Shown in pieces: positions 3,429 to 55,715 of a DNA stretch of 64,000 nucleotides (position 1 is its first letter; every line of letters begins with the position of its first letter). The stretch is taken from positions 62,001-126,000 of the IMG/VR virus record IMGVR_UViG_3300040801_002079; one strand, 5' to 3'. A program made the position numbers and the translations under genes. Under the pieces are notes generated by a model. That model had not been told where the DNA came from. It saw nothing but the letters and a program-made list of their open reading frames with translations, and made no database searches.

Positions 3429-3542
3429 GAGCAAGATGGGTGTCGCACCCACATTTTCACTAACTATACTGGGAAACCTCATTATAAGGGTTGCAACCAT
3501 TCCCAGACGCTTCGTTGACTAGTATTGAAGCTTACATTGCTC
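3429..3542 (-). ncRNA. Candidate tRNA-like RNA (cloverleaf with enlarged loops)
   Basis: GAGCAA/UUGCUC closing stem, GCUUC/GAAGC arm, CUGGGAA/UUCCCAG arm, T-arm-like GUGGG-UGCGACA-CCCAU; no standard anticodon loop. Confidence 0.5.
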
Positions 3543-3545
3543 ATT

Positions 3546-3740
3546 GTGAGAGTAACACAGACCTCTCTATGCATTTTAGAATCAGGTAAACGACTGATCC
3601 ACTCTCAGGTGAATAAAAAGGGAAGTGAGGGAAGGGTAGATACCAACCTACCTTAGTTTTCTGATTCGGGTTCCCTGTATGCCTGTGTTCCTCATATGGA
3701 CCATCAAAGCAAGCAGTACAGTGGCATCCCCCACTTCCAA
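3546..3740 (-). ncRNA. Candidate structured RNA downstream of a sigma70 promoter
   Basis: ORF-free; GGAAGUGGGGGA/UUCCCUCACUUCC and UGAGAGU/ACUCUCA stems; promoter TTGACA-17-TATAAT at 3776-3748. Confidence 0.45.
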
Positions 3741-3747
3741 TAAATTC

Positions 3748-3776
3748 ATTATACTAAAATGATAATGGGTTGTCAA
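3748..3776 (-). promoter_or_regulatory. Consensus sigma70 promoter
   Basis: TTGACA (3776-3771), 17 nt spacer, TATAAT (3753-3748). Confidence 0.8.
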
Positions 3777-3924
3777 GTCCTTAGCGGGAAGCAGGCAGTC
3801 AATCTGCGTTCCCTGTAGCCGTTACATTGAGTTAGTCAATGATCTGACCCCTGAGTCACGGGGTAGGCTAACAGACAGTAGGTTAGCTGGTGACTAAATC
3901 CAGCCCTGCTCCCTGCTAAGGACT
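3776..3924 (-). ncRNA. Candidate multi-hairpin RNA directly 3' of tRNA-Leu
   Basis: About 20 bp closing stem AGUCCUUAGCAGGGAGCAGG/CCUGCUUCCCGCUAAGGACU enclosing several short hairpins. Confidence 0.55.
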
Positions 3925-3931
3925 CTTTATT

Positions 3932-4018
3932 TGGTGCCGAGGGCGGGACTCGAACCCGCATGGGATTTCTCCCGGCAGATTTTAAGTCTGCTGTGTATAC
4001 CAGTTCCACCACCCCGGC
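3932..4018 (-). tRNA. tRNA-Leu(TAA)
   Basis: GCCGGGG acceptor, GCAGA-CTTAAAA-TCTGC anticodon arm, long variable arm, GGTTCGAGTCC, encoded CCA. Confidence 0.97.
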
Positions 4019-4240
4019 AAAAACTTATTATATCACTCCCATTCAGTTCCTTCAAGTAGATATTACCAGAGTCTCCCATTGTGTACAATCAGTCTAGCGT
4101 ACATGATTGCTGCTAACGGCATAAGAATCAGGTTGACAACTTCCAGAGTAGTGGGGTAACCTCGTGCTTGAACACTCATTACCATACTACCAGCAATCAG
4201 ACCCGTTAAAAAGATAACGCAGGAACGAAAATAATTCATT

Positions 4241-9513: not shown

Positions 9514-12500
9514 GGTTATCTCCGTGGTTGATGGAGATATTATAACACAACACTAAGTGTTATGCAACGGAACAATCTGCTTCTATTCTATCATCCATTG
9601 ATCGAATTTCAATGTCCCACACTGAGCAATCATGTGCTTCTGCATATTCTTCAGGGGAACCAAAGCGACATTGATCTTCTCTACAATCTCCGTTAAAATT
9701 CCACGGATGATAGTGATCGCAGATTCCACATTCGAAAATGATATGCATGTTTTACTCCTGATCGTCACCATCAGTGCGTTTCATCTTCGGCTTACTAACT
9801 GATGCTTTGGCGGCACCACGAGCAAGACTGCGTGGAATACCACGTTCAATCAGTTGCTTCAGTTTCTTGCGAAAGATCGGCTGGCGCTGATCCCATTCGT
9901 ATTCCGCAGATGCGCGGGGCTGTGCTGTATCTTTCATTTTATTTCCTCAATCGAATTCCAATGTTTTCAAGCGTTTTCTTTTTCCATGCACGAACCGCAT
10001 CTTCGTTCATTCTGCGAGTCGTAACCTGAAAAGGAAAGTTAAGTACACCTTCTTCCTCTGCATTGGACAGGGCTTCCAGAATATCCTCGGCTTCCTGTTC
10101 GTGGCAAACGGTGATGGTCATTTCAATCATGTTCTTTCTCCGTGGTTGATGGAGATATTATAGCACAGTGGATTTAGTTATTCAAGCTTGTCTGGGATTT
10201 CATCCGGGATTTGTTCTAACAGCACTTTCCATCTTCTGAGAAGTCTTCTAAACTTCTGAACGTCAAACTGTCCTTGTGTTATTTCAAATACGATGGGATC
10301 ATTGGTGGGATTCTTTCTTGATTTCATCATACCTTCAACTTGATAAAGTAGTTGGTCTAATTTCTCTATGAGGTAAAATGCCTGTTGCTGTTCTTCTGTG
10401 TACGCCATAGATGTATTTATCGCGCACCTTTACATTTATTCATTATTCATGTCAATTGCTTCATCAATGTCATCAGCATCACCTCTCCAGATGTGACGCA
10501 TGTATCCCACTTCGCTATAATCATTAGCTGGGTGCTCATAATGTCCGTTATCCGTCCAATAAGCAATGCCCAGAATGTCCCACTCTTTTGGAAAGGGGAT
10601 GTGATTACTGTTGCAAAACTTTTCCAAACGGTTCAAATCGAACTTGGTAATGTTACTATATTCTTCTGGAAGGGTATCGGGGTAAGGAATACCATCACCT
10701 CGAACAAGGATTTCACCGAATGTTGAGTGAATGCGGATCATGCATGACCCTCTGCAAACCACGGGCTGGTCATTTCATCAAAACGACCATGACGGGCATG
10801 ATTCTCATACTCGGCTTCAATACCCAGACGGGATTCAAGAGAGTGAGAGAAGAAGTCATGGAAGTACCAGTGATCTTCGTTGATGGAACCAACTTCCTCA
10901 ACCCGCTGGGCAAGACGCTTTGCGGCTTCCAGACCGTCCTTCGACCAACGCATCGCAGAACCGGAGTCCCTGAAGGAAACATTGTGAACCAGAGTGCGAC
11001 CATCTTCCAGATCGGCGCAGACAAACAGGATGGTGTCGAAGTACTGGGTATCTTCGATGAACTCACCCTCTACGACCCAATCGCTGATGTAAACATTGAT
11101 GACCTTGATCCGTGACATTTGTTTGCTCCGTGGGTGTTTCCGATTTATGAGTCTATTATAACACAACCACCGGTAGTGTCAAGGGAGTTTCCCAAGATTT
11201 TCTGTGATATAATCCCACTTCATCTTCTCTGCAATTTCCCTCAACCAGAAGTGGGGGGCTTTACCATCAAGAGCATTGTTCATGTGATCAATCATCTCAG
11301 CGGCAATCCATCCAATATGCTCTTCGGGGGGATACTCACCTTTTTCACCCTCTTCCCGTGCTAACTCACGAAGTGAATCCATTACAAATTCCGGAGTCAG
11401 AAATTCATCGTTTCCTGTGAAGATTTTCATCAGATCAGTACTCCAGTTCAGGAATGTAACCAACGTGGGCTTCCAACTCAGCATAGACCTTCATGTAGTA
11501 GCTGTACTTACGCTGGGCTTCAGCATTGCTGATTTCACCGTCACAGTGCAGGTTCTCGGGGCTGAGGTCACCCTCAAGGTTGTACACGATCTTTTCCGCG
11601 TCATCACGGGAAAGGGGGAACGTCATCAGGGGACGCTTCGACAGTTCATTCCAGAAGTTCAGGCGTTCAACGTAGTTCTTCAGGTTCTGCATTGACTTTC
11701 TCCGTGGTTGATGGAATCATTATACCACAGTCATTCGTCAAAGTAAAACAATGCTCCTGCATAACCATCATCTTCTTCATTTGTGAATGGGCCTGCGCCC
11801 AGCACATGAGTGTGTGGCTTTTGTTTGGAACTGTGCTCGGTATACACAACAAGTTCCCCATCAGCATTGACACCCATTTCAATATCCCACTCACCCAGCG
11901 TCATTTTGATAACTTCCGGCATCAGTCTACTCCGTATGCTTCCTTACATGGCAATACATCAGAAGTGGTTTCTCGTTGACCGTTAAAGGGATTATAAAAG
12001 TGGTCAATTGAATCAAGAAATGAAGAATCTACCCCCATTATACCACCAGATTCATTATCTTTCCATAATTCCAGTTCAACCAGACCCCCGCTTGTGGGGT
12101 CTATGACTTCAACCGTTGTTATAAATGTATAAGGTTTCATCCTGTTCCATGTCCTTCAATCATGCTGTTGCACCCTTTACTTCGGGGGTGAACAATGCGT
12201 CACGATCCCACATCAGTTTGAGTTCTTCAACTTCACTCAGAAACTGATCCCACATCCATCCATCAATCTCAATGATTTCAGGGTTATACAGATTGTCAAT
12301 GTTAACAAACTGGGCATCACCCAAATCACTATCCTCACTACGGAGATACGTCTTACCGTTCTTCGCTTCAAGGATCATGTTCCAGTATCCATTTTCATAC
12401 ACCCCTATGGATACCACACCAAGACACCCGATATTCAGGGTCTTTTCCCTATGGTCAATCATTAAATTTCCCCTTTAAACACTCAATTCCTCTGCGGCTT

Positions 12501-13851
12501 TCAGTTCTTCGACAACACACCGTGCATCTTCAAACGAGATGTACCTGTCGTTCTTGTCATCGTAAATGAATTCCTCGTCATCTGCATCAAGGAGTTCACT
12601 CTTGATAGATTCCAAGCAATTCAGCACCGTTTCCAGCACATCAGCTTCCGATGAATATTGTGACATTCTTTTCATTTGCTTTCTCCGTGGTCAATGCGTA
12701 TATTATATCACAAATGCATACCCAGTACAACAGCAGAACTTACTGCAAGCACACTGGACATGGTGCGAAAGAGTTTCGGTGAACCCTCAATAGAGGGCAC
12801 AAAGATGGAAAAGAACATTCCAAACAACATTGAACCCAACAGCATCCATTCAAGAGTATTCATAGCATTGTTGTCCTTCTGTTTGATTTCGGAAAGAATA
12901 CCAGTTCTGTGACAGGAAAGCAAATTTCATCTTTCCAATCGGGCTTTACACCGTTAATAATGACAGAACGGTTCTGCAACCAGCGGCGTTTTTCACTGTT
13001 GGAAGCTACAACTGCTTGGTTCCCATTGAATTGCATGGGAACATGGGGCAGGGAACATAAGAACTTCCAAGCTTGCATGACTATCTCCGTGGTTTTGTTT
13101 ATTATACCACGAAGATTAATTCATATCAACTCGTTCAACACTCAGAGTGTCTTGTTCAAAATCTTCAGGCATACCGTCATTGAGAACACTGAAAATCTGA
13201 TGTGCTTCTTCAACAGCTTCATCTTCCGTTTGAGCATTCACTTCGTATGTCTTGGTTACTATTGCTTGGATTGTTACCCTGTAGACATTTTCCATGCTGA
13301 AGTTCAATCCACGGTTCACCCAGAGCACGGGGAAATCGGGATCAGCGTTAACAGACTGTTCTTCTGCATGTTCAGCATCTTCTGCTTCACAGATGAAATA
13401 ATCCCACTCACCTTCGTCCTCACGAATGACTACAAAGGTTTTGAGTCCCTGATCCAAATGTTGATCGGCAATATAATTAATCATTATCATCCTCCAGTGC
13501 TGCGAGTAGATTGTTCAGAACAGGTTTCGGAACGGCATATCCGTGTGTGTCGCAAATGCTCTGCAATCCACCCTGCAATGTAGCCAGCTTCGCTTCCAGT
13601 TCGTCATTCTTCTTCGCTAACTGGTCGCATTCACCTTGATAAAACTCTTGCCAGTAGACTTCTGCTTTTTCTAGTTCAGCGATGCGGTCTGCATCCTCTT
13701 TACGAATCCCGCAAAGCCGACACCGTGGAGCACTCCATGCTCCTCGTACCCAATCGTGATTGCATTCACTCATTCCTGCTTCTCCTTTATGCACCGCTTT
13801 CTCCATTCGTATGAATCCAGTTCGTACTGCGTGTACTTCTGGTTGTATCGG

Positions 13852-49602: not shown

Positions 49603-51892
49603 AGATGGTTACATTGTTTTTAGCACAAACGGTGAGTTCTTTGACACCGAATTTGATTGTGTATGTGATGAAGTTGAAGACCTTCGTGAAGATGGTGAGA
49701 TTGTAAGTATATGGGTTGGTGAACTTGATGAAGTTAATCACCGGGATTACATTAATGCTCACTATATTGTCGAACAAATGGCTGATGCGGCATATGATGA
49801 TTTAGATGACTTTACAGAAGGTTATCTGGATGATGTAACCATGAAGCAACTTGACGAATTGGAAGAAGTTATCTCCAATTGGTTCGATGAGAATGTTTCA
49901 AAACCATCGTTTTTCAGGGTTCGAAACATGAGAGAGGTTAGTTTTAAAGTGGGTCAACGGGATAAGGCATGGAAGGCAATACATGACGGATAAAATAAGA
50001 CCACTATCTGAATATCTTGATGAAAGTTGGGAAGACCCGCATAAGCGTAAGTATTTGAAAGAGGCGGTGTTTGACTATAATCGCAGACTTCGTGAAGAAA
50101 ATGAGGCTCTTATTGCTTTTATAGATGAATATATGGGAGTTCCCGATGGGACCAGACTGTGGCCCATGTTTGAACATGCTAATAGAGTCGTTAAGCGATT
50201 TGAAAAAATGGACCAAAGAATATCCCAACTGGAAGAGGTTATAGAAATTCTACGCAACTGTGACCCCGTTACTATACAAATGCCCGTTGGTGGTAACGTT
50301 CCATTTGTACCATATAGTAAAATTAGAAGATTACTGGAGAAAGTTTAATGACTAAAGAAAAGGGCAATAACAACCCCTTCAAGTCTGCAATAGAAAAAGC
50401 TAAAAAGGATTTAGAAGGATTCGATGAAGCCATGGAGATTGTTAAAGAGTTGAGAAACCCAACAAAGAATAGGCCGTTTATTCACAAAGAGCGGGTACAG
50501 AAAGGACCCTATGAGGTTGTGGAAGAAGAAACCACGTATGATGAAATTGATGAAATTTTTGGTACGGATGGTAACAATCTTGTAAGTTCAATGATGCAAA
50601 GAATTCGTGATTACGAAGATGTAATTAAAACTTTAACCGATGAAAATAAAAGATTAAAGAATTCTAATAAAATTTCGGTCATTTCTGAGGACATTTCCAG
50701 TCTAAGAGATTGGATTTTAGGGGAATCCAAAAGGCTAAATGATGAAATTAGGAATATATCTAAAGTTGTCAAGGATGTTAAAAAGTGCAAGGTTTATGTA
50801 CTAGATTCAAGAGGTAATATGATTGAAGAGAGTGATGATACACCGTTATCTGCAATTAGATATATACAAAGAGATGATGTATTAAGAGTTTTTAAAAACA
50901 GGAGGCTGGTTGATAAAAATGGCTAATAAAACTTTAGAAGTTTGGTACAGATATGATGATGACTATGATGGAAATGTGCTCTGCACAAAGTATGAAGTAT
51001 TAAAGCATACCCCGAAAGGTGTTTGGTTAAAGTTTGGAAACAATGATAAATTTGTACTAAAAGGTGCTAGGAAGCGTTTTGCATGTCCAGATAAGGATTC
51101 AGCATTAGAGTCTTTTATAGCTAGGAAATATTCACAGCGCAAAATTGTTAGAAGACAGGTTGATAGGGTGGAAAAGGCAATACTTTCTGCACAAACAATT
51201 CAGGCTGGATTAAAACCACATAGATTTACACAAGTATATACCATAGGGAGCTTTACGCATGACTATCCATAACAATAATGAATTAGACTGGGCTAGATTA
51301 TTAAAAGAACAAGAAGAAGAAACCAAACGATATAAAGCTTTATATGAAACACGAGAAAAGCAATTGGAATGTGCTCATAAGCGAATTCGTGACATAAAGC
51401 GATGTCAGAGATATAGTATTGATAAAAACGGCAATCCAGTTGAATGGAGATTCGGAAAGTGGATCATTCATGAAGAAATGGTAAAAGCTGCGGCCCTTCC
51501 CCATGAAGATGACGAGAGGTAAAAACAATGTTTCCTGATACATATTGTGCATTCTGTCATAATAGAACAGCAACCGGATGTGAACATTGCAACCCCTCTG
51601 TTCATGGACGCATTGACTTTTTTCCCGATCCCCCCGATTTGGAAAGAGAAATTGAAGAGATTAAAAAGCGGTTAGATAAGCTGGAGAATAAAGATGTTTA
51701 GTTGGGTGTTATTACTGGCAAGTCTTATATTATTAGCTGGTGTAATGTTAATGGCTGGGTATGACTTTAAAAAGCAAACCGTGCCCGTACTTATAGGGGC
51801 GACACTTCTTTGGGTATTGATTACATTGGCAAATTTTATATCTCCAACCACATAGCTTTCTATAAATACGGATAATAATCCGAGGATTTGCT

Positions 51893-53212
51893 ATGAAAAT
51901 TAATGAAGTCATGGGCGGTGAAAAACGAGCCGCGATAAAAAAGGGTACGAAAAGACCCATGGGACTTTCCCATAAAATCAATAAACAGTCTAAGAAACTC
52001 CAAAATAAAGCTGCTAGACGCAAAAGCAAGCGTGAATTGGAATTGTCTGAGTCTATAAATGTAATTCTATTTGAAAAACTAAAATTACTCCATGATAAGA
52101 AAAATGGAGTTCTCGCTGTGGCTTCCGACGAAACTGACCCCAAAAAGGCAAGCCGAGAAACGTATCGCAATAAAGATGCTCTTAAGTCTGCTGGTTTTAA
52201 ATGGTCTGGTGGCAACTGGACTATTAGTGATTCTGAGTTTGAAAAAGCCAAGTCTACATTAACCACAATTAACAAAACAGAATACCTGATTAATAAACTG
52301 GAAGATGTTCAGGAATTTATCGGTGATGCTACCAGTGACCCTAAGAAGGGGAGATTAACCGATATGATTCAGGGTTATATTGATGACTTGGCAAGTGCTA
52401 CAGATGAAGCCGCTGCTGCCGAAGAAATACGTAAGTATTTGGATTTCTTCTCTAATTTTTATCAGTACAGTTTCTTCAATAAGATTTTAATCTATATTCA
52501 GAACCCGGATGCAACTCAGGTTGCTAGCTATAAAAACTGGAGGAAAAAGCATCGTCAGGTTAAGAAGGGCGCTAAAGGTATGCAGATTCTCGTACCTATA
52601 TTCCCAAAGGGACGCAATCCAAAATATGATGATGTGGATGAGGATGATAAAGCTCAGCCAGTAAGATTCATTGTTGGCAGCGTGTTTGATATTAAGGACA
52701 CGGAAGCTATAGATGAAAGAGGTGAGGCTCCTGAAGAACCAGAGTGGTGGGGTGACAATACTCCAAGTGAAACGGCTAAAGACCTATTCAATTTGGTTGT
52801 CAAGGCAGCAGAAGCTGAAGGCATTGATATAACCTCTGATGATGCGAAAGGGGGAGAGAAGGGCTACAGTTCTGGTGGACATATTAACATCACATCGAAT
52901 GTAGAAGGTGTGGGTGAAGTTTCCACGATGGTTCATGAGTTTGCACACGAATTAATGCACTGGAAGGATCGCTCCAAGTTTTATGTTGGTGATGAGGCCG
53001 CTGGAAACAGGAAACTTAAAGAACTACAAGCCGAGAGTGTGTCATATGTTGTCCTGAAGCATTATAAGCTTCCAGTTGAGCATCACACTAAATATCTTGC
53101 TTTGTGGAGAGCAACCGGTGAAAAAATCAAGAACAACATTGAAACAATTTCAAAAGTTGCTCATTACATTATTAAAAAGATTGACGCTCAAGCAGAAAAG
53201 AAATCTAAATAA
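51893..53212 (+). CDS. ArdC-like ssDNA-binding domain plus zincin metallopeptidase (anti-restriction/polyvalent type)
   Basis: YSFFNKILIYIQNPDATQVASY..W....RQVKKGAKG..IL.P, VFDI..TE, HEFAHELMH, ELQAESVSY; TATAAATA at 51861. Confidence 0.88.
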   Translation: MKINEVMGGEKRAAIKKGTKRPMGLSHKINKQSKKLQNKAARRKSKRELELSESINVILFEKLKLLHDKKNGVLAVASDETDPKKASRETYRNKDALKSAGFKWSGGNWTISDSEFEKAKSTLTTINKTEYLINKLEDVQEFIGDATSDPKKGRLTDMIQGYIDDLASATDEAAAAEEIRKYLDFFSNFYQYSFFNKILIYIQNPDATQVASYKNWRKKHRQVKKGAKGMQILVPIFPKGRNPKYDDVDEDDKAQPVRFIVGSVFDIKDTEAIDERGEAPEEPEWWGDNTPSETAKDLFNLVVKAAEAEGIDITSDDAKGGEKGYSSGGHINITSNVEGVGEVSTMVHEFAHELMHWKDRSKFYVGDEAAGNRKLKELQAESVSYVVLKHYKLPVEHHTKYLALWRATGEKIKNNIETISKVAHYIIKKIDAQAEKKSK

Positions 53213-53248: not shown

Positions 53249-54055
53249 ATGACTACACATAGAGAACAATTTTTAAATCAATGCGCCTGTATTGATTTTG
53301 AAACAACGAGCTTAGAACCCGAAGAAGCTGAAATCATTGAGCAAGGCATAAGTGTATACGAAGATGGGAACTGGACTGTGGCAACTTCTATGTTGCACGA
53401 CTGTAAAGCTCCAGATGTTCCAGCCGAAGCATCCGCTGTAAACAACATTACGAAGCCAATGCTAAAAGGTTACGGCCCATTCAGTCTTGATAATTTCGGA
53501 TTATTATCTATAAAGCCTCATAGGAATATATTAATTTCACATAATGTCAAATATGACAGCATGGTATTAAAGAACTATGTTGATCCCGAGACATTTGAAG
53601 CACTTTCTTCTAATTGGCTATGCAGCTATCGTATGGCTAAAAAGTTATATGTTAATCGTCCCGAGTATAAATCATTAAGCCTTGCCTATCTACGGTACAG
53701 GCGCAAGCTATGTGAATTTGTTAAAATTCCAACCGAGCCTCACAGAGCGGGATATGATTCGTACATCAATGGCCTTCTTTTGGAGGACATTATCGACATA
53801 TTAGAAGAGGCTAATATATTGGATAAGGATAAACCATACTTTGGACAACTAAAAGATTGGCTGAAGCCACCTATAATGTTGGAATACATGCCCGGATTTG
53901 GTAAACATGCTGGGGAACGGTTGGACGAACTTGATTTCGGCTATTTGAAATGGGTGTTCGAAAATACCGACAGATGTGATGAGGATAGTCCCGAGTATGA
54001 TATTGATCTGGCAACTACATTAGCTGGATATATGGCAAAAGCTTATAAGGGTTGA
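53249..54055 (+). CDS. DnaQ-like DEDDh 3'-5' exonuclease (ExoX-like)
   Basis: IDFETT, SHNVKYD, HRAGYD; C-terminal FGKHAG......GYLKW. Confidence 0.88.
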   Translation: MTTHREQFLNQCACIDFETTSLEPEEAEIIEQGISVYEDGNWTVATSMLHDCKAPDVPAEASAVNNITKPMLKGYGPFSLDNFGLLSIKPHRNILISHNVKYDSMVLKNYVDPETFEALSSNWLCSYRMAKKLYVNRPEYKSLSLAYLRYRRKLCEFVKIPTEPHRAGYDSYINGLLLEDIIDILEEANILDKDKPYFGQLKDWLKPPIMLEYMPGFGKHAGERLDELDFGYLKWVFENTDRCDEDSPEYDIDLATTLAGYMAKAYKG

Positions 54056-54352
54056 TATAAATGGATGATTTTTATAAAGAAATTATAGATTATATTCGCA
54101 AATCTGATGAAAAGAAGGTTCACTTAGCAGAGTTATGGGATGTTTTCTTTGAAGGAAAAGATATTCCTGCCGGGGCTATCATGATGGGGCTATCTCATGA
54201 TAGCATTAAACGGGTCATAGGCTTGTTTTCTCCGTATACTGGAAACCTATTAGAAACATATGATTCTCTTGGGGATATTCCGTATACATGGGATGAAGAT
54301 GGGGCATCATTTGAAATTAATGATACACATATCAGCGTGTGGTATGAATTAA

Positions 54353-54391
54353 ATGAGTAAGGTTGGCTTCACATGCTCAACGTTTGATTTA
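54353..54391 (+). pseudogene. Stranded original 5' end of the cytidylyltransferase gene (MSKVGFTCSTFDL)
   Basis: Peptide matches MKIGFTCSTWDL at 55100 and is separated from it by the endonuclease gene. Confidence 0.8.
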
Positions 54392-54437
54392 ACATATTGG
54401 ACTTCTGATAAATATAATCAGAAAGAGGAGTCTTTAT

Positions 54438-55103
54438 ATGTTTGGGTATATCTATATAACAACAAACCTGATTAATGATAAGAAATATATTGGAAAAAGA
54501 TATGGTGCGTTTGATTCAACATATTATGGATCAGGCACTATATTAAAAAAGGCTATAGAGAAGTACGGACTTAAAAACTTTAACACTGTACTCTTGAAAG
54601 AATGTTGCAATGAAGAAGATATTAATAAATCAGAAAAAATATTAATACGTGTATTGAATCCGGAATATAACATAGCTGAAGGTGGAGCAGGAGGGAACAC
54701 TCTACTACATGCGTCAGATGATCATAAATTAGAGGTGATTAAAAAAAGGTCTATATCCTTAAAGAAAGCATGGGATCGTAAAGATAGGAAAAAGTGGGGC
54801 AAAGCTATAAGTGAGGCAAAAAAAGGTAAAAGGTGTGGCGGGGTTAAAGCACATACTGATGAAACTAAATTGAAAATATCAAAAAGTAATAAAATTGCGG
54901 CTAAAAATAGACCGGAATCATGGAAAGTTAATCACCAAATTGCGTCAGAAAAGAGGAAGGGTATTCCAAATAAAAAATGCATGAAACCCCTAATCCTAGA
55001 TGGTAAAAAGTATAATAGTAGAAAAGAGGCAGCGAAGAAACTTGGTGTAACGGGATCAATGATAACTTACTATATTAAAAAGGGTAGAGGTAGATATTTA
55101 TGA
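54438..55103 (+). CDS. GIY-YIG homing endonuclease (Seg-like, NUMOD/HTH C-terminus)
   Basis: GYIYITTNLIN.KKYIG, YYGSG..L..AI.KYG..NF, YNIAEGGAGG, HTDETKLKIS, YNS.KEAAK.LG. Confidence 0.9.
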   Translation: MFGYIYITTNLINDKKYIGKRYGAFDSTYYGSGTILKKAIEKYGLKNFNTVLLKECCNEEDINKSEKILIRVLNPEYNIAEGGAGGNTLLHASDDHKLEVIKKRSISLKKAWDRKDRKKWGKAISEAKKGKRCGGVKAHTDETKLKISKSNKIAAKNRPESWKVNHQIASEKRKGIPNKKCMKPLILDGKKYNSRKEAAKKLGVTGSMITYYIKKGRGRYL

Positions 55104-55516
55104 AAATAGGGTTTACGTGCAGTACATGGGATTTATTACATTCCGGGCATATTATCATGTTACGACAAGCTAAAGCACAGTGTGACTACCTGATTTGTGG
55201 ACTCCAAGTTGATCCATCTGTTGACCGCTCTGAAAAAAATTCTCCCGTGCAAACATTGGTTGAGCGATATATTCAATTATCTGCTGTCAAATATGTTGAT
55301 GAAATTATAACCTATCAAACTGAAAAGGATTTAGAAGATATATTGCAAATGATTGATATTGATGTCAGAATACTAGGCGAGGAATACCGAGAAAAAGATT
55401 TTACCGGTAAAGCAATTTGCAGAAAAAGAGGTATTGACTTATTCTTCAACAAGAGGGATCATAGATTTTCTACTTCCGATTTAAGGAAGCGAGTTATGGA
55501 GGCAAACAATGTCTGA
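55100..55516 (+). CDS. tagD: Glycerol-3-phosphate cytidylyltransferase-like (TagD family)
   Basis: DLLHSGH (HxGH), DYLICGL, ER...L...KYVDEI, R....STS. Confidence 0.85.
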   Translation: MKIGFTCSTWDLLHSGHIIMLRQAKAQCDYLICGLQVDPSVDRSEKNSPVQTLVERYIQLSAVKYVDEIITYQTEKDLEDILQMIDIDVRILGEEYREKDFTGKAICRKRGIDLFFNKRDHRFSTSDLRKRVMEANNV

Positions 55517-55715
55517 TTGGATTAATATTGACGAAGAACGTCCCGTTAAAATAAAGAAATACAAAGTTTTATTGAATGAAGAGCATGAATACGAAGCAAC
55601 GTGGCATCCGGGTAAAGGAGAAAATGGAATGTTCGTTGATATTAACCTCATGATGGAGCTTCCTGATGTAACACATTGGAAGGATAATACTAAATATCTA
55701 AGAGGTACCGAATAA
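55509..55715 (+). CDS. DUF551-like small protein
   Basis: MSDWINIDEERP...VTHW. Confidence 0.65.
   Translation: MSDWINIDEERPVKIKKYKVLLNEEHEYEATWHPGKGENGMFVDINLMMELPDVTHWKDNTKYLRGTE

What the first reader, a model, noticed from the sequence alone, without database searches (positions are those of the whole stretch)
54353..55140. Homing endonuclease split a cytidylyltransferase gene and repaired it with a recoded N-terminus
Seen: the upstream stub ATG AGT AAG GTT GGC TTC ACA TGC TCA ACG TTT GAT TTA (MSKVGFTCSTFDL) parallels the functional ATG AAA ATA GGG TTT ACG TGC AGT ACA TGG GAT TTA after the GIY-YIG gene. 8 of 11 aligned codons differ although the peptide is nearly the same. The insertion point is just before the HxGH motif, and the insert brings a late promoter. 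Inference: splicing-free invasion in which the element restores its target gene and makes it immune to cutting.
Basis: partly seen in the sequence, partly recalled or inferred. Interest (0 to 1): 0.7.

Follow-up and report, generated by a model that had tools for sequence, protein, structure and literature searches.

The report
Homing endonuclease cassette replacing a gene start
A selfish endonuclease gene has invaded the start of a phage nucleotidyltransferase gene without any intron, leaving the old 13-codon start as a dead stub and bringing its own intact copy. Related endonucleases show the same layout in dozens of unrelated uncultured phages.

Summary
At 54353-54391 an ATG-led stub (MSKVGFTCSTFDL) copies the first 12 codons of the cytidylyltransferase-like gene at 55100-55516. 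A Seg-like GIY-YIG homing endonuclease gene (54438-55103) lies between them. The stub is the best non-self match among 633,538 six-frame positions of the 317-kb phage genome.

No endonuclease-free relative of this phage was found. However, the endonuclease belongs to a subfamily that always sits directly upstream of this transferase gene: 8 of 8 context look-ups and 29 of 29 IMG/VR loci, in different phage backbones. Every cassette whose upstream DNA could be read has a transferase-like stub followed by an ATAAATA promoter-like motif.

One sister case has an endonuclease-free relative. There the stub sequence is the start of an intact gene. In the invaded genome the whole downstream gene is foreign (74% identity against 93-99.9% in the flanks).

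The window also holds a second, older, decayed stub that travels with the cassette.

The "recoding" is ordinary divergence between alleles. Immunity to cutting is only indirectly supported: endonuclease-linked alleles almost never keep the consensus STFDLLH codons.

This is a phage, 5'-end mirror image of the mitochondrial mobile ORFs that carry a foreign gene end.

The parts
54061..54360 (+). Resident upstream ORF (99 aa, no known family). Its stop overlaps the stub's ATG (ATGAGTAA).
   Evidence: The protein is found only as an identical sequence on 7 contigs of one study.
54353..54391 (+). Native stub: the first 13 codons (MSKVGFTCSTFDL) of the resident transferase gene, cut off just before LHxGH. 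All residues fit the family consensus.
54353..54475 (+). A mechanical 40-aa ORF that starts with the stub and runs across the endonuclease's ribosome-binding site and start codon in another frame. It may interfere with endonuclease translation on read-through transcripts (inference).
54389..54409 (+). Older, decayed stub carried by the cassette (TTAACATATTGGACTTCTGAT). It is homologous to the TTTACATGTTGAACATTTGAT block (FTC*TFD) upstream of related endonucleases.
   Evidence: Alignment A1; (the L197/L201 block TTTAACATACTGAACATTCGAT is the most similar).
54407..54414 (+). GATAAATA, resembling the T4-type late promoter, 23 nt before the endonuclease ATG.
   Evidence: An (N)ATAAATA motif is conserved in all related cassettes.
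54389..54418 (+). Alternative sigma-70-like promoter, TTAACA-18 nt-TATAAT (11 of 12 consensus positions). Its -35 element is formed at the junction of the two stubs.
54425..54430 (+). GAGGAG ribosome-binding site of the endonuclease.
54438..55103 (+). Free-standing Seg-like GIY-YIG homing endonuclease (221 aa). The catalytic motif residues are conserved and the C-terminus looks like a helix-turn-helix.
55100..55516 (+). Complete HxGH nucleotidyltransferase gene (138 aa, TagD / RfaE domain II-like). Its ATG overlaps the endonuclease stop (ATGA). The public gene call starts 19 codons too late and so loses HxGH.
55124..55150 (+). Codons TWDLLHSGH: the presumed former target region, carrying the rare TGG (W) and TCC (S) variants.

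Best explanation
The region is a mobile cassette made of four parts: an old transferase-like stub, an ATAAATA promoter with a ribosome-binding site, a Seg-like GIY-YIG homing endonuclease, and a copy of the transferase gene (at least its 5' end).

Its lineage specialises on one target, the highly conserved codons ...S-T-F-D-L-L-H-x-G-H at the start of a phage HxGH nucleotidyltransferase gene.

Inferred steps:
1. During co-infection the endonuclease cuts a naive allele near these codons.
2. The break is repaired from the endonuclease-carrying genome.
3. The right end finds homology inside or beyond the transferase gene.
4. The left end joins either by homology with the cassette's old stub or by an illegitimate join.

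The recipient therefore keeps its own first 8-13 codons as a dead stub. It acquires the promoter, the endonuclease and a foreign but complete gene start, or the whole gene. No splicing is needed, because the enzyme is encoded intact downstream and is probably translationally coupled to the endonuclease (ATGA overlap).

Shown here: the anatomy, the strict endonuclease-transferase linkage across many phage backbones, the stubs, and one presence/absence pair.

Inferred: the cut site, the repair route, and the idea that the unusual residues in linked alleles (W in the window) protect against re-cutting.
For: 1. The stub is a unique, highly significant copy of the gene start. It sits at the resident start position, overlapping the upstream gene's stop.

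2. The transferase family's N-terminus is nearly invariant, M[KR][VI]GFTCSTFDLLH[AS]GH, in 80 viral loci and 119 proteins. The stub is therefore exactly a family gene start truncated before LHxGH.

3. The endonuclease has a full-length subfamily at 44-59% identity. All 7 members looked up, plus L175, lie directly upstream of and overlap a PF01467 gene. Their upstream neighbours differ: a tRNA, PolB, dCMP deaminase, topoisomerase, GATase and others. In IMG/VR, 29 of 29 loci with a full-length match and enough downstream DNA show the same arrangement. Relatives that match only in the N-terminal domain have no transferase nearby.

4. Every one of these cassettes whose upstream DNA could be read has a transferase-like stub just before an (N)ATAAATA motif. 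Several stubs carry stops, frameshifts or deletions. L175, L193, L196, L216 and the window carry two stubs in tandem: a native one plus the cassette's older one.

5. L175 and L194 share a backbone (92.7% and 99.87% nt identity in the flanks). L194 lacks the endonuclease and has an intact gene, MTKEQKIVGFTASTFDLLHAGH. The L175 stub, MSKEQKIVGFTA, aligns to that gene's first 37-40 nt. The L175 gene body is only 74% identical along its whole length.

6. Endonuclease identity and linked-transferase identity co-vary across 25 distinct pairs (Mantel r = 0.73; 0 of 2000 permutations reached it).

7. No intron-like RNA was found. The best Rfam E-value was 2.4, and all hits were unrelated families.

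8. About 1 of 20 distinct endonuclease-linked alleles keeps STFDLLH. The others have W (4 lineages), LF, LC, M or an extra codon. By contrast 75 of 80 endonuclease-free loci and 112 of 119 proteins keep it.
Against: - No endonuclease-free relative of this phage exists in the collections searched, so the empty site is shown only for a sister case.
- Neither composition nor a 5'-versus-3' similarity comparison shows how much of the window's gene is foreign.
- The window's endonuclease is closest to L179 and L181 (58-59%), but its transferase is closest to L175 (80%). The endonuclease and the gene body have therefore not always travelled together.
- W alleles also occur without an endonuclease (L174, L177).
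- Many endonuclease-linked alleles belong to other transferase sub-clades, so the residue contrast is partly confounded by phylogeny.
- Nothing here shows cleavage.
Confidence: 0.8

Rival explanations
1. The stub is not a scar but a working part of the element. It might be the left homology arm, so that both arms lie inside the target gene and the cassette can home into unrelated genomes. It might also be an operator that the endonuclease binds to repress its own promoter, or the -35 element of that promoter. This extends the main explanation rather than excluding it.
For: - The 20-30 nt block ...TTTACATGTTGAACATTTGATAAATAAAT... is recognisable upstream of endonucleases that are only 45-70% identical as proteins.
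- Shared defects follow endonuclease lineages. L184 and L193 share TTTACAACATTTGAT. L186 and L188 share TGTAGAACATTTG. L197/L201 and the window share TTTAACATAYTG.
- Single clean chimeric stubs such as L199 (MKVGITFSAFDK*) and L191 look like homologous crossovers inside the stub.
- The stub directly abuts or overlaps the promoter motif. I-TevI's operator, which resembles its homing site, likewise overlaps its late promoter (PMC2988022).
- In the window the stub junction forms TTAACA, 18 nt before TATAAT.
Against: - The block may be conserved only because each homing event refreshes it from conserved coding sequence.
- Double stubs (window, L175, L193, L196, L216) show that joins are often illegitimate rather than made by homology.
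- There are no binding or recombination data.
Confidence: 0.3
2. The endonuclease simply lives in the intergenic space upstream of the transferase gene and is inherited vertically. The stub would then come from an unrelated local duplication of the gene start.
For: - Free-standing Seg and Mob genes of T4-like phages normally sit between genes (PMC2988022).
- Endonuclease and transferase identities co-vary.
Against: - The flanking genes differ completely among instances.
- L175 and L194 differ by presence or absence within a 93-99.9% identical backbone, and the gene is replaced.
- Stub and gene are only 67% identical at the DNA level. A recent local duplication would give near identity.
- Stubs recur in every instance.
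Confidence: 0.07
3. The endonuclease lies in a self-splicing intron, the stub is exon 1, and RNA splicing joins it to LHSGH.
For: - The endonuclease matches TIGR01453, named 'group I intron endonuclease'.
- Short first exons are easily missed in phage annotation (PMC10448857).
Against: - No group I or group II intron model matches 53900-55700, even at E up to 10.
- The downstream gene has its own ribosome-binding site, ATG and complete consensus N-terminus.
- Stubs in sister cassettes contain stop codons, frameshifts and deletions.
- An intron would have no reason to carry a second copy of exon 1.
Confidence: 0.03

Closest known systems
Mitochondrial mobile ORF elements (mORFs) that carry a foreign gene end: Allomyces macrogynus atp6; Glomus atp6, atp9, cox2 and nad3 (PMC3630166)
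   Same: - An endonuclease ORF is inserted into a protein-coding gene without an intron.
- The element brings its own divergent copy of the gene terminus, which keeps the gene whole.
- The native terminus is left as a nearby remnant.
- The native copy resembles close relatives, and the inserted copy is foreign.
   Different: - Mirror image: here the 5' end (N-terminus) is duplicated and the remnant lies upstream. The endonuclease is a separate cistron with its own promoter and ribosome-binding site, not fused in frame.
- The host is a phage, not a mitochondrion.
- The enzyme is a GIY-YIG Seg-like protein (the mitochondrial cases are mostly LAGLIDADG).
- Nested stubs record repeated invasions.
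T4 Seg endonucleases and intronless homing (SegF, SegG, SegB; PMC2988022; PMC2330249 listed)
   Same: - A free-standing GIY-YIG endonuclease with a C-terminal DNA-binding region.
- Expected to cut the endonuclease-free allele of a neighbouring conserved gene and to spread with co-conversion of flanking markers.
- Polymorphisms in the endonuclease-linked allele would give resistance.
- Best matches to cultured phages are Seg-like genes at 29-37% identity.
   Different: - T4 seg genes sit between intact genes and leave no duplicated gene start.
- Here the junction lies inside the coding sequence, and a stub plus a replacement start result.
- Activity has not been tested here.
Genes in pieces made by endonuclease insertion (mobE in Aeromonas phage Aeh1 nrdA; mobA in T4 gene 60/39; seg in phage 25 gene 43; PMC2988022)
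   Same: A free-standing endonuclease gene is inserted in a functionally critical, conserved part of a phage gene without an intron.
   Different: In those cases both fragments are needed and reassemble as subunits. Here the downstream copy is complete and the 13-codon stub is dispensable.
I-TevI autorepression through an operator that resembles its homing site and overlaps its late promoter (PMC2988022)
   Same: A sequence resembling the target lies directly at a late-type promoter upstream of a GIY-YIG endonuclease gene.
   Different: Here the target-like sequence is a gene-start remnant. Its binding by the endonuclease is a guess.

Membership tests
GIY-YIG homing endonucleases (Seg-like / I-TevI-like) | GIY-YIG catalytic domain with its conserved Tyr, Gly, Glu and Asn residues | tested here: met
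   TIGR01453 scores 68.4 bits against a cut-off of 56, and phrog_314 gives E 2e-35. Alignment of 18 subfamily members keeps G3, Y4, I5, Y6, Y17, G19, Y29-G31-S32-G33, E66 and Y77-N78-I79 invariant. Pfam PF01541 and PF19835 hit the homologues but stay below threshold for the window protein.
GIY-YIG homing endonucleases (Seg-like / I-TevI-like) | Separate C-terminal DNA-binding module | tested here: inconclusive
   Only weak helix-turn-helix matches at residues 196-217: MerR E 0.007, and HTH_29 and I-TevI_DNA-bd in homologues at E 3e-4 to 4e-3. The strict linkage to the transferase gene holds only for relatives that share the C-terminal half.
GIY-YIG homing endonucleases (Seg-like / I-TevI-like) | Presence/absence polymorphism between otherwise near-identical genomes, with conversion of flanking sequence | tested here: met
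   Met for the sister cassette, L175 against L194. Not testable for the window's own phage, because no relative was found.
GIY-YIG homing endonucleases (Seg-like / I-TevI-like) | Site-specific cleavage of the endonuclease-free allele and resistance of the endonuclease-linked allele | not testable with these tools
   Indirect evidence only. Native stubs end within about 11 nt of each other around the S-T-F-D-L codons, and linked alleles deviate at STFDLLH.
Intron-encoded endonuclease (group I or group II intron) | Ribozyme structure flanking the ORF, with exons joined by splicing | tested here: not met
   No intron family in Rfam 15 matches 53900-55700 at E up to 10. The downstream copy is a complete gene, and sister stubs are broken.
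Mobile ORF with a carried gene terminus (mitochondrial mORF type) | An endonuclease ORF flanked by two divergent copies of one end of the target gene, one in use and one a remnant | tested here: met
   Window. A further 20 or more distinct cassettes.
Mobile ORF with a carried gene terminus (mitochondrial mORF type) | The remnant matches the close relative's gene, and the copy in use is foreign | tested here: met
   In the L175/L194 pair the stub region is 85% identical to the start of the relative's gene and the flanks are 92.7%, while the gene in use is 74%. This could not be tested for the window itself.
Genes in pieces (split gene whose parts reassemble) | Each fragment encodes a necessary part of the protein | tested here: not met
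   The gene at 55100-55516 covers the full PF01467 profile (positions 2-133 of 133) and the full family N-terminus. The stub adds nothing.
HxGH nucleotidyltransferases (TagD / RfaE domain II-like) | HxGH motif and the cytidylyltransferase-like fold signature | tested here: met
   PF01467 E 2e-12. TIGR00125 scores 48 bits against a cut-off of 27.7. The protein stays below the equivalog cut-offs of RfaE domain II and TagD, so its substrate is unknown. The nearest solved relatives are cytidylyltransferases.

The most novel reading that the evidence does not exclude
The stub is a built-in part of a self-sufficient homing cassette. The endonuclease would be flanked by a direct repeat of the first ~30-40 nt of its target gene, so that both homology arms lie inside the target. 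The element could then enter the same gene in any phage, whatever the neighbouring genes, without intron or intein. The upstream repeat might also serve as the promoter's -35 element or as an operator for the endonuclease. Tandem stubs would be a readable record of successive invasions. The DUF7487 insertion in the clamp-loader gene of L194 has the same layout, so this could be a general, unrecognised mode of endonuclease spread in aquatic phages.
Probability: 0.3. Interest if true: 0.75.

Novelty: new variant of a known kind. Interest (0 to 1): 0.6.

Why it matters
- It shows a third way, besides introns/inteins and intergenic parking, for a homing endonuclease to occupy the most conserved part of a phage gene without harming it: the element carries a replacement gene start (or a whole allele) and discards the old one.
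- It defines an endonuclease lineage tied to one auxiliary gene across many uncultured aquatic phages. That lineage drives allele replacement of the gene between unrelated genomes.
- It has a practical consequence for annotation. The public gene call for this transferase starts 19 codons too late and loses the HxGH motif. Short stub ORFs upstream of endonucleases are gene fossils, not genes.
- The stubs mark the likely cut site and give a ready set of natural "resistant" and "sensitive" alleles for biochemical tests.

Tried and rejected
- Megablast of the region against 50,697 phage records found nothing.
- The upstream 99-aa ORF has no relatives in IMG/VR. Among 5.8 billion proteins it matches only itself. 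All 7 contigs that carry it are the same population and carry the endonuclease wherever they reach that far.
- A degenerate DNA pattern for stub plus junction found nothing in IMG/VR.
- Public runs: contigs of the source microbial-mat sample show no joint that skips the endonuclease, at depth about 5. A ~96% relative in a salt-marsh run covers only scattered 151-nt pieces, none over the insertion. A second run search added nothing. These gaps prove nothing either way.
- GC, GC3 and codon-usage fit do not set the transferase gene apart from the genome. The endonuclease is slightly AT-richer.
- Window-by-window DNA comparison of the gene's 5' end with other linked and free alleles shows no mosaic boundary.
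- W-type alleles were checked as possible markers of the endonuclease. L175 and L184 have it, but L174 and L177 do not.
- The first genome-wide stub scan timed out. The tblastn version was swamped by Thr-Pro repeats and tRNA-derived frames. The vectorised version found no other true gene-start stub.
- The other three GIY-YIG genes of this genome were listed but showed no obvious stub.
- The intron hypothesis was rejected.
- Literature searches found no phage description of this layout or of an endonuclease-cytidylyltransferase link.
Full report
**What is in the window**

The window is bases 62001-126000 of a 316.8-kb IMG/VR phage record with terminal repeats, assembled from a microbial-mat metagenome. 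On the + strand the region reads as follows:
- A 99-aa ORF of no known family lies at 54061-54360.
- An ATG at 54353 overlaps that ORF's stop (ATGAGTAA) and opens MSKVGFTCSTFDL (54353-54391).
- A 46-nt leader follows.
- A 221-aa ORF lies at 54438-55103.
- Overlapping its stop by ATGA, a 138-aa ORF lies at 55100-55516 and begins MKIGFTCSTWDLLHSGH.

The 221-aa protein is a Seg-like GIY-YIG homing endonuclease. It matches phrog_314 at E 2e-35 and TIGR01453 above its cut-off. Its best matches among cultured phages are Seg genes at 30-34% identity.

The 138-aa protein is an HxGH nucleotidyltransferase (PF01467, E 2e-12). It resembles TagD and RfaE domain II but scores below their equivalog cut-offs, so its substrate is unknown.

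**Is the observation more than chance?**

Yes. Eight of the 11 aligned codons differ (6 synonymous), exactly as reported.

Scored against every six-frame position of the genome, the stub is by far the best non-self match to the gene start: 54, against 34 for the next best of 633,538 positions.

The transferase family is very large in aquatic viral metagenomes (7,960 proteins at E < 1e-30). Its N-terminus is nearly invariant, M[KR][VI]GFTCSTFDLLH[AS]GH. The stub is therefore a family gene start cut off just before LHxGH.

The amount of codon difference is unremarkable. Stub and gene share 18 of 27 nt, while pairs of endonuclease-free alleles share 20.3 +/- 2.4, and 24% of those pairs share 18 or fewer. 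The two copies are different alleles, not a deliberately recoded one.

**No empty site for this phage**

Nothing similar to the region exists among 50,697 phage records. The upstream ORF has no relatives at all, apart from identical copies on seven contigs of the same study, and these carry the endonuclease wherever they reach that far. Laid contigs of public runs show no joint and are too thin to be informative.

**The comparative evidence that decides the case**

The rare W (STWDL) led to protein P0029. Its contig, L175, has a 223-aa ORF directly upstream that is 48% identical to the window's endonuclease over its full length. A decayed stub lies before that ORF.

A protein search then showed a full-length endonuclease subfamily at 44-59% identity. 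All seven members looked up sit directly upstream of a PF01467 gene and overlap it. Their genomic contexts are unrelated, with upstream neighbours that include a tRNA, PolB, dCMP deaminase and a GATase.

A profile-based scan of IMG/VR gave the same result. All 29 loci with a full-length match and enough downstream sequence have the transferase gene right after the endonuclease. Relatives that share only the catalytic domain have none. The C-terminal half, presumably the DNA-binding part, therefore goes with the target.

No cultured phage carries this subfamily; the best matches are 37% or less.

**Stubs everywhere, some nested**

Every cassette whose upstream DNA could be read has a transferase-like fragment immediately upstream of the endonuclease. 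It runs into an (N)ATAAATA motif and a ribosome-binding site. Examples:

| Locus | Stub reading |
|---|---|
| L199 | MKVGITFSAFDK* |
| L191 | MTRKVGIVFSTFDK* |
| L179 | MYFTC*TFDK* |
| L181 | RIGFTCRTIDLYK* |
| L184 | RIVFTTFDK* |

Several loci have two stubs in tandem, a clean native one followed by a decayed one:

| Locus | Native stub | Older stub |
|---|---|---|
| L175 | MSKEQKIVGFTA | FTC*TFDK* |
| L193 | MKVGITFS | VTFTTFDK* |
| L196 | MIVGFTCST* | VYMYNI..., the TTTACATGTACAACATTTGAT block |
| L216 | KIGITFS | a decayed block |

The decayed versions are shared along endonuclease lineages, so they travel with the cassette.

The window belongs to the two-stub class. Its leader, TTAACATATTGGACTTCTGATAAATA (from 54389), aligns with the cassette block TTTACATGTTGAACATTTGATAAATA of L179 and L175. 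It aligns best with TTTAACATACTGAACATTCGAT of L197/L201.

**A true presence/absence pair**

P0117 begins MTKEQKIVGFTASTFDLLHAGH, which looked like the intact form of L175's native stub. Its contig, L194, has the same backbone as L175: gyrase-B-like gene, topoisomerase, transferase, clamp loader, DUF2452 gene and deaminase. It has no endonuclease.

The flanks are 92.7% (upstream) and 99.87% (downstream) identical. L175's stub aligns to the first 37-40 nt of L194's gene. L175's working gene is only about 74% identical, evenly along its whole length up to the clamp-loader start.

In that case the endonuclease arrived together with an entire foreign allele, and only the first dozen codons of the resident gene survive.

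Across 25 distinct cassettes, endonuclease identity and transferase identity co-vary (Mantel r = 0.73; 0 of 2000 permutations reached it). This fits joint travel.

The window is partly an exception. Its endonuclease is nearest to L179 and L181, but its transferase is nearest to L175. Conversion tracts evidently vary, and a short tract is possible here. Neither composition nor segment-wise DNA similarity resolves this for the window.

**Promoter**

GATAAATA lies at 54407-54414, 23 nt before the endonuclease ATG.

| Motif | Occurrences with an ORF start within 45 nt downstream |
|---|---|
| TATAAATA | 34 of 60 |
| GATAAATA | 17 of 31 |
| ATAAATA | 93 of 156 |
| Background (all positions) | 7% |

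The motif therefore behaves as a real promoter-like signal of the T4 late type in this genome, and TATAAATA is over-represented in the window. It is conserved in all cassettes.

A sigma-70-like TTAACA-18 nt-TATAAT (11 of 12) overlaps the same place. Which one is used, and when, is unknown.

**Immunity**

This is inferred only. The consensus STFDLLH is kept by 75 of 80 endonuclease-free viral loci and by 112 of 119 family proteins. Only about 1 of 20 distinct endonuclease-linked alleles keeps it. The others have W for F (window, L175, L184, L197/L201), LF, LC, M, other residues before FD, or an added codon (FDLGPH).

Native stubs end within about 11 nt of one another around the S-T-F-D-L codons. 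Both facts point to a recognition or cut site there.

There are two caveats. Many linked alleles belong to other sub-clades, and W also occurs without an endonuclease.

**Rivals**

An intron is excluded as far as sequence analysis can exclude it (complete downstream gene; broken sister stubs). Vertical residence combined with a local duplication is contradicted by the different contexts and by the L175/L194 pair.

One extension remains open. The stub may be functional as a homology arm, an operator or a -35 element. I-TevI provides a precedent, with a homing-site-like operator over its late promoter (PMC2988022).

**Relation to what is known**

The closest described systems are the mitochondrial mobile ORFs. 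These carry a foreign C-terminal copy of atp6, atp9, cox2 or nad3 and leave the native C-terminus as a remnant (PMC3630166).

T4 Seg "intronless homing" and the genes-in-pieces insertions are related but differ, as set out in the membership table (PMC2988022).

In the searchable literature I found no phage example of a carried gene start with an upstream stub, and no link between endonucleases and this transferase.

I therefore rate it a new variant of a known kind: real, recurrent and mechanistically informative, but built from known principles.

Noticed in passing
L194:3429-4190: The same layout occurs with a different inserted gene and a different target. A clamp-loader stub (ATGAAAGAACTATGGGTAGAAAAATGA = MKELWVEK*) is followed by CATAAATA, a ribosome-binding site and a 230-aa DUF7487 ORF (3488-4180). 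The complete clamp-loader gene then restarts at 4161 (MKKLWVEAYRP). L175 lacks the insert. DUF7487 may be an unrecognised homing endonuclease or a similar selfish gene.
   Followed up: partly
window 54817-54823 (L171:1085-1091): One sibling contig has A6 instead of A7 in the endonuclease gene, which splits it into 144 + 77 aa. This is either a sequencing or assembly error in a homopolymer, or a population variant with an inactivated endonuclease.
   Followed up: partly
window 55100-55156: The public gene call for the transferase starts at the internal Met (MLRQAK, 119 aa) and drops the first 19 codons, including HxGH. Pfam support is then only 'weak'. The family consensus shows that 55100 is the true start.
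   Followed up: yes
whole genome G000 (e.g. window 51861-51868, upstream of the ArdC-N-like gene at 51893): ATAAATA lies within 45 nt upstream of an ORF start in 93 of 156 occurrences, against a 7% background. This 317-kb phage therefore appears to use a T4-type late-promoter-like signal.
   Followed up: partly
L207-L214 (e.g. L208:3225-3644): A group of endonuclease-linked transferase alleles has one extra codon in the nucleotide-binding motif (FDLGPHAGH instead of FDLLHAGH). This could be a change in target-site spacing.
   Followed up: no
L186:3641-4033, L187:2553-2945 and L188:3640-4035: A second, short (130-131 aa) SegE-type GIY-YIG ORF lies about 0.5 kb downstream of the transferase gene in the dCMP-deaminase-context phages. 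The gene is thus bracketed by two endonuclease genes.
   Followed up: no
G000:C1:232666-233870 (outside the window): Another GIY-YIG endonuclease gene of this genome lies among tRNA-like repeats. The translated frames show the typical WVGLEPTRA / GSSP patterns. The arrangement is reminiscent of T4 segB in its tRNA cluster.
   Followed up: no
window 10133-12912 (G000 72133-74912): N-terminal peptides of neighbouring small ORFs recur 1-1.6 kb upstream (LSPWSMRILYHK / LSPWLMESLYHS; TFSVVDGIIIPQ / SFSVVDGDIIAQ). These are probably a small tandem gene family or a repeated leader.
   Followed up: no
L179:1816-1900: In this cassette the upstream neighbour of the stub is a tRNA-like sequence ending in CCA, so the transferase gene it invaded lay directly after a tRNA gene.
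   Followed up: no
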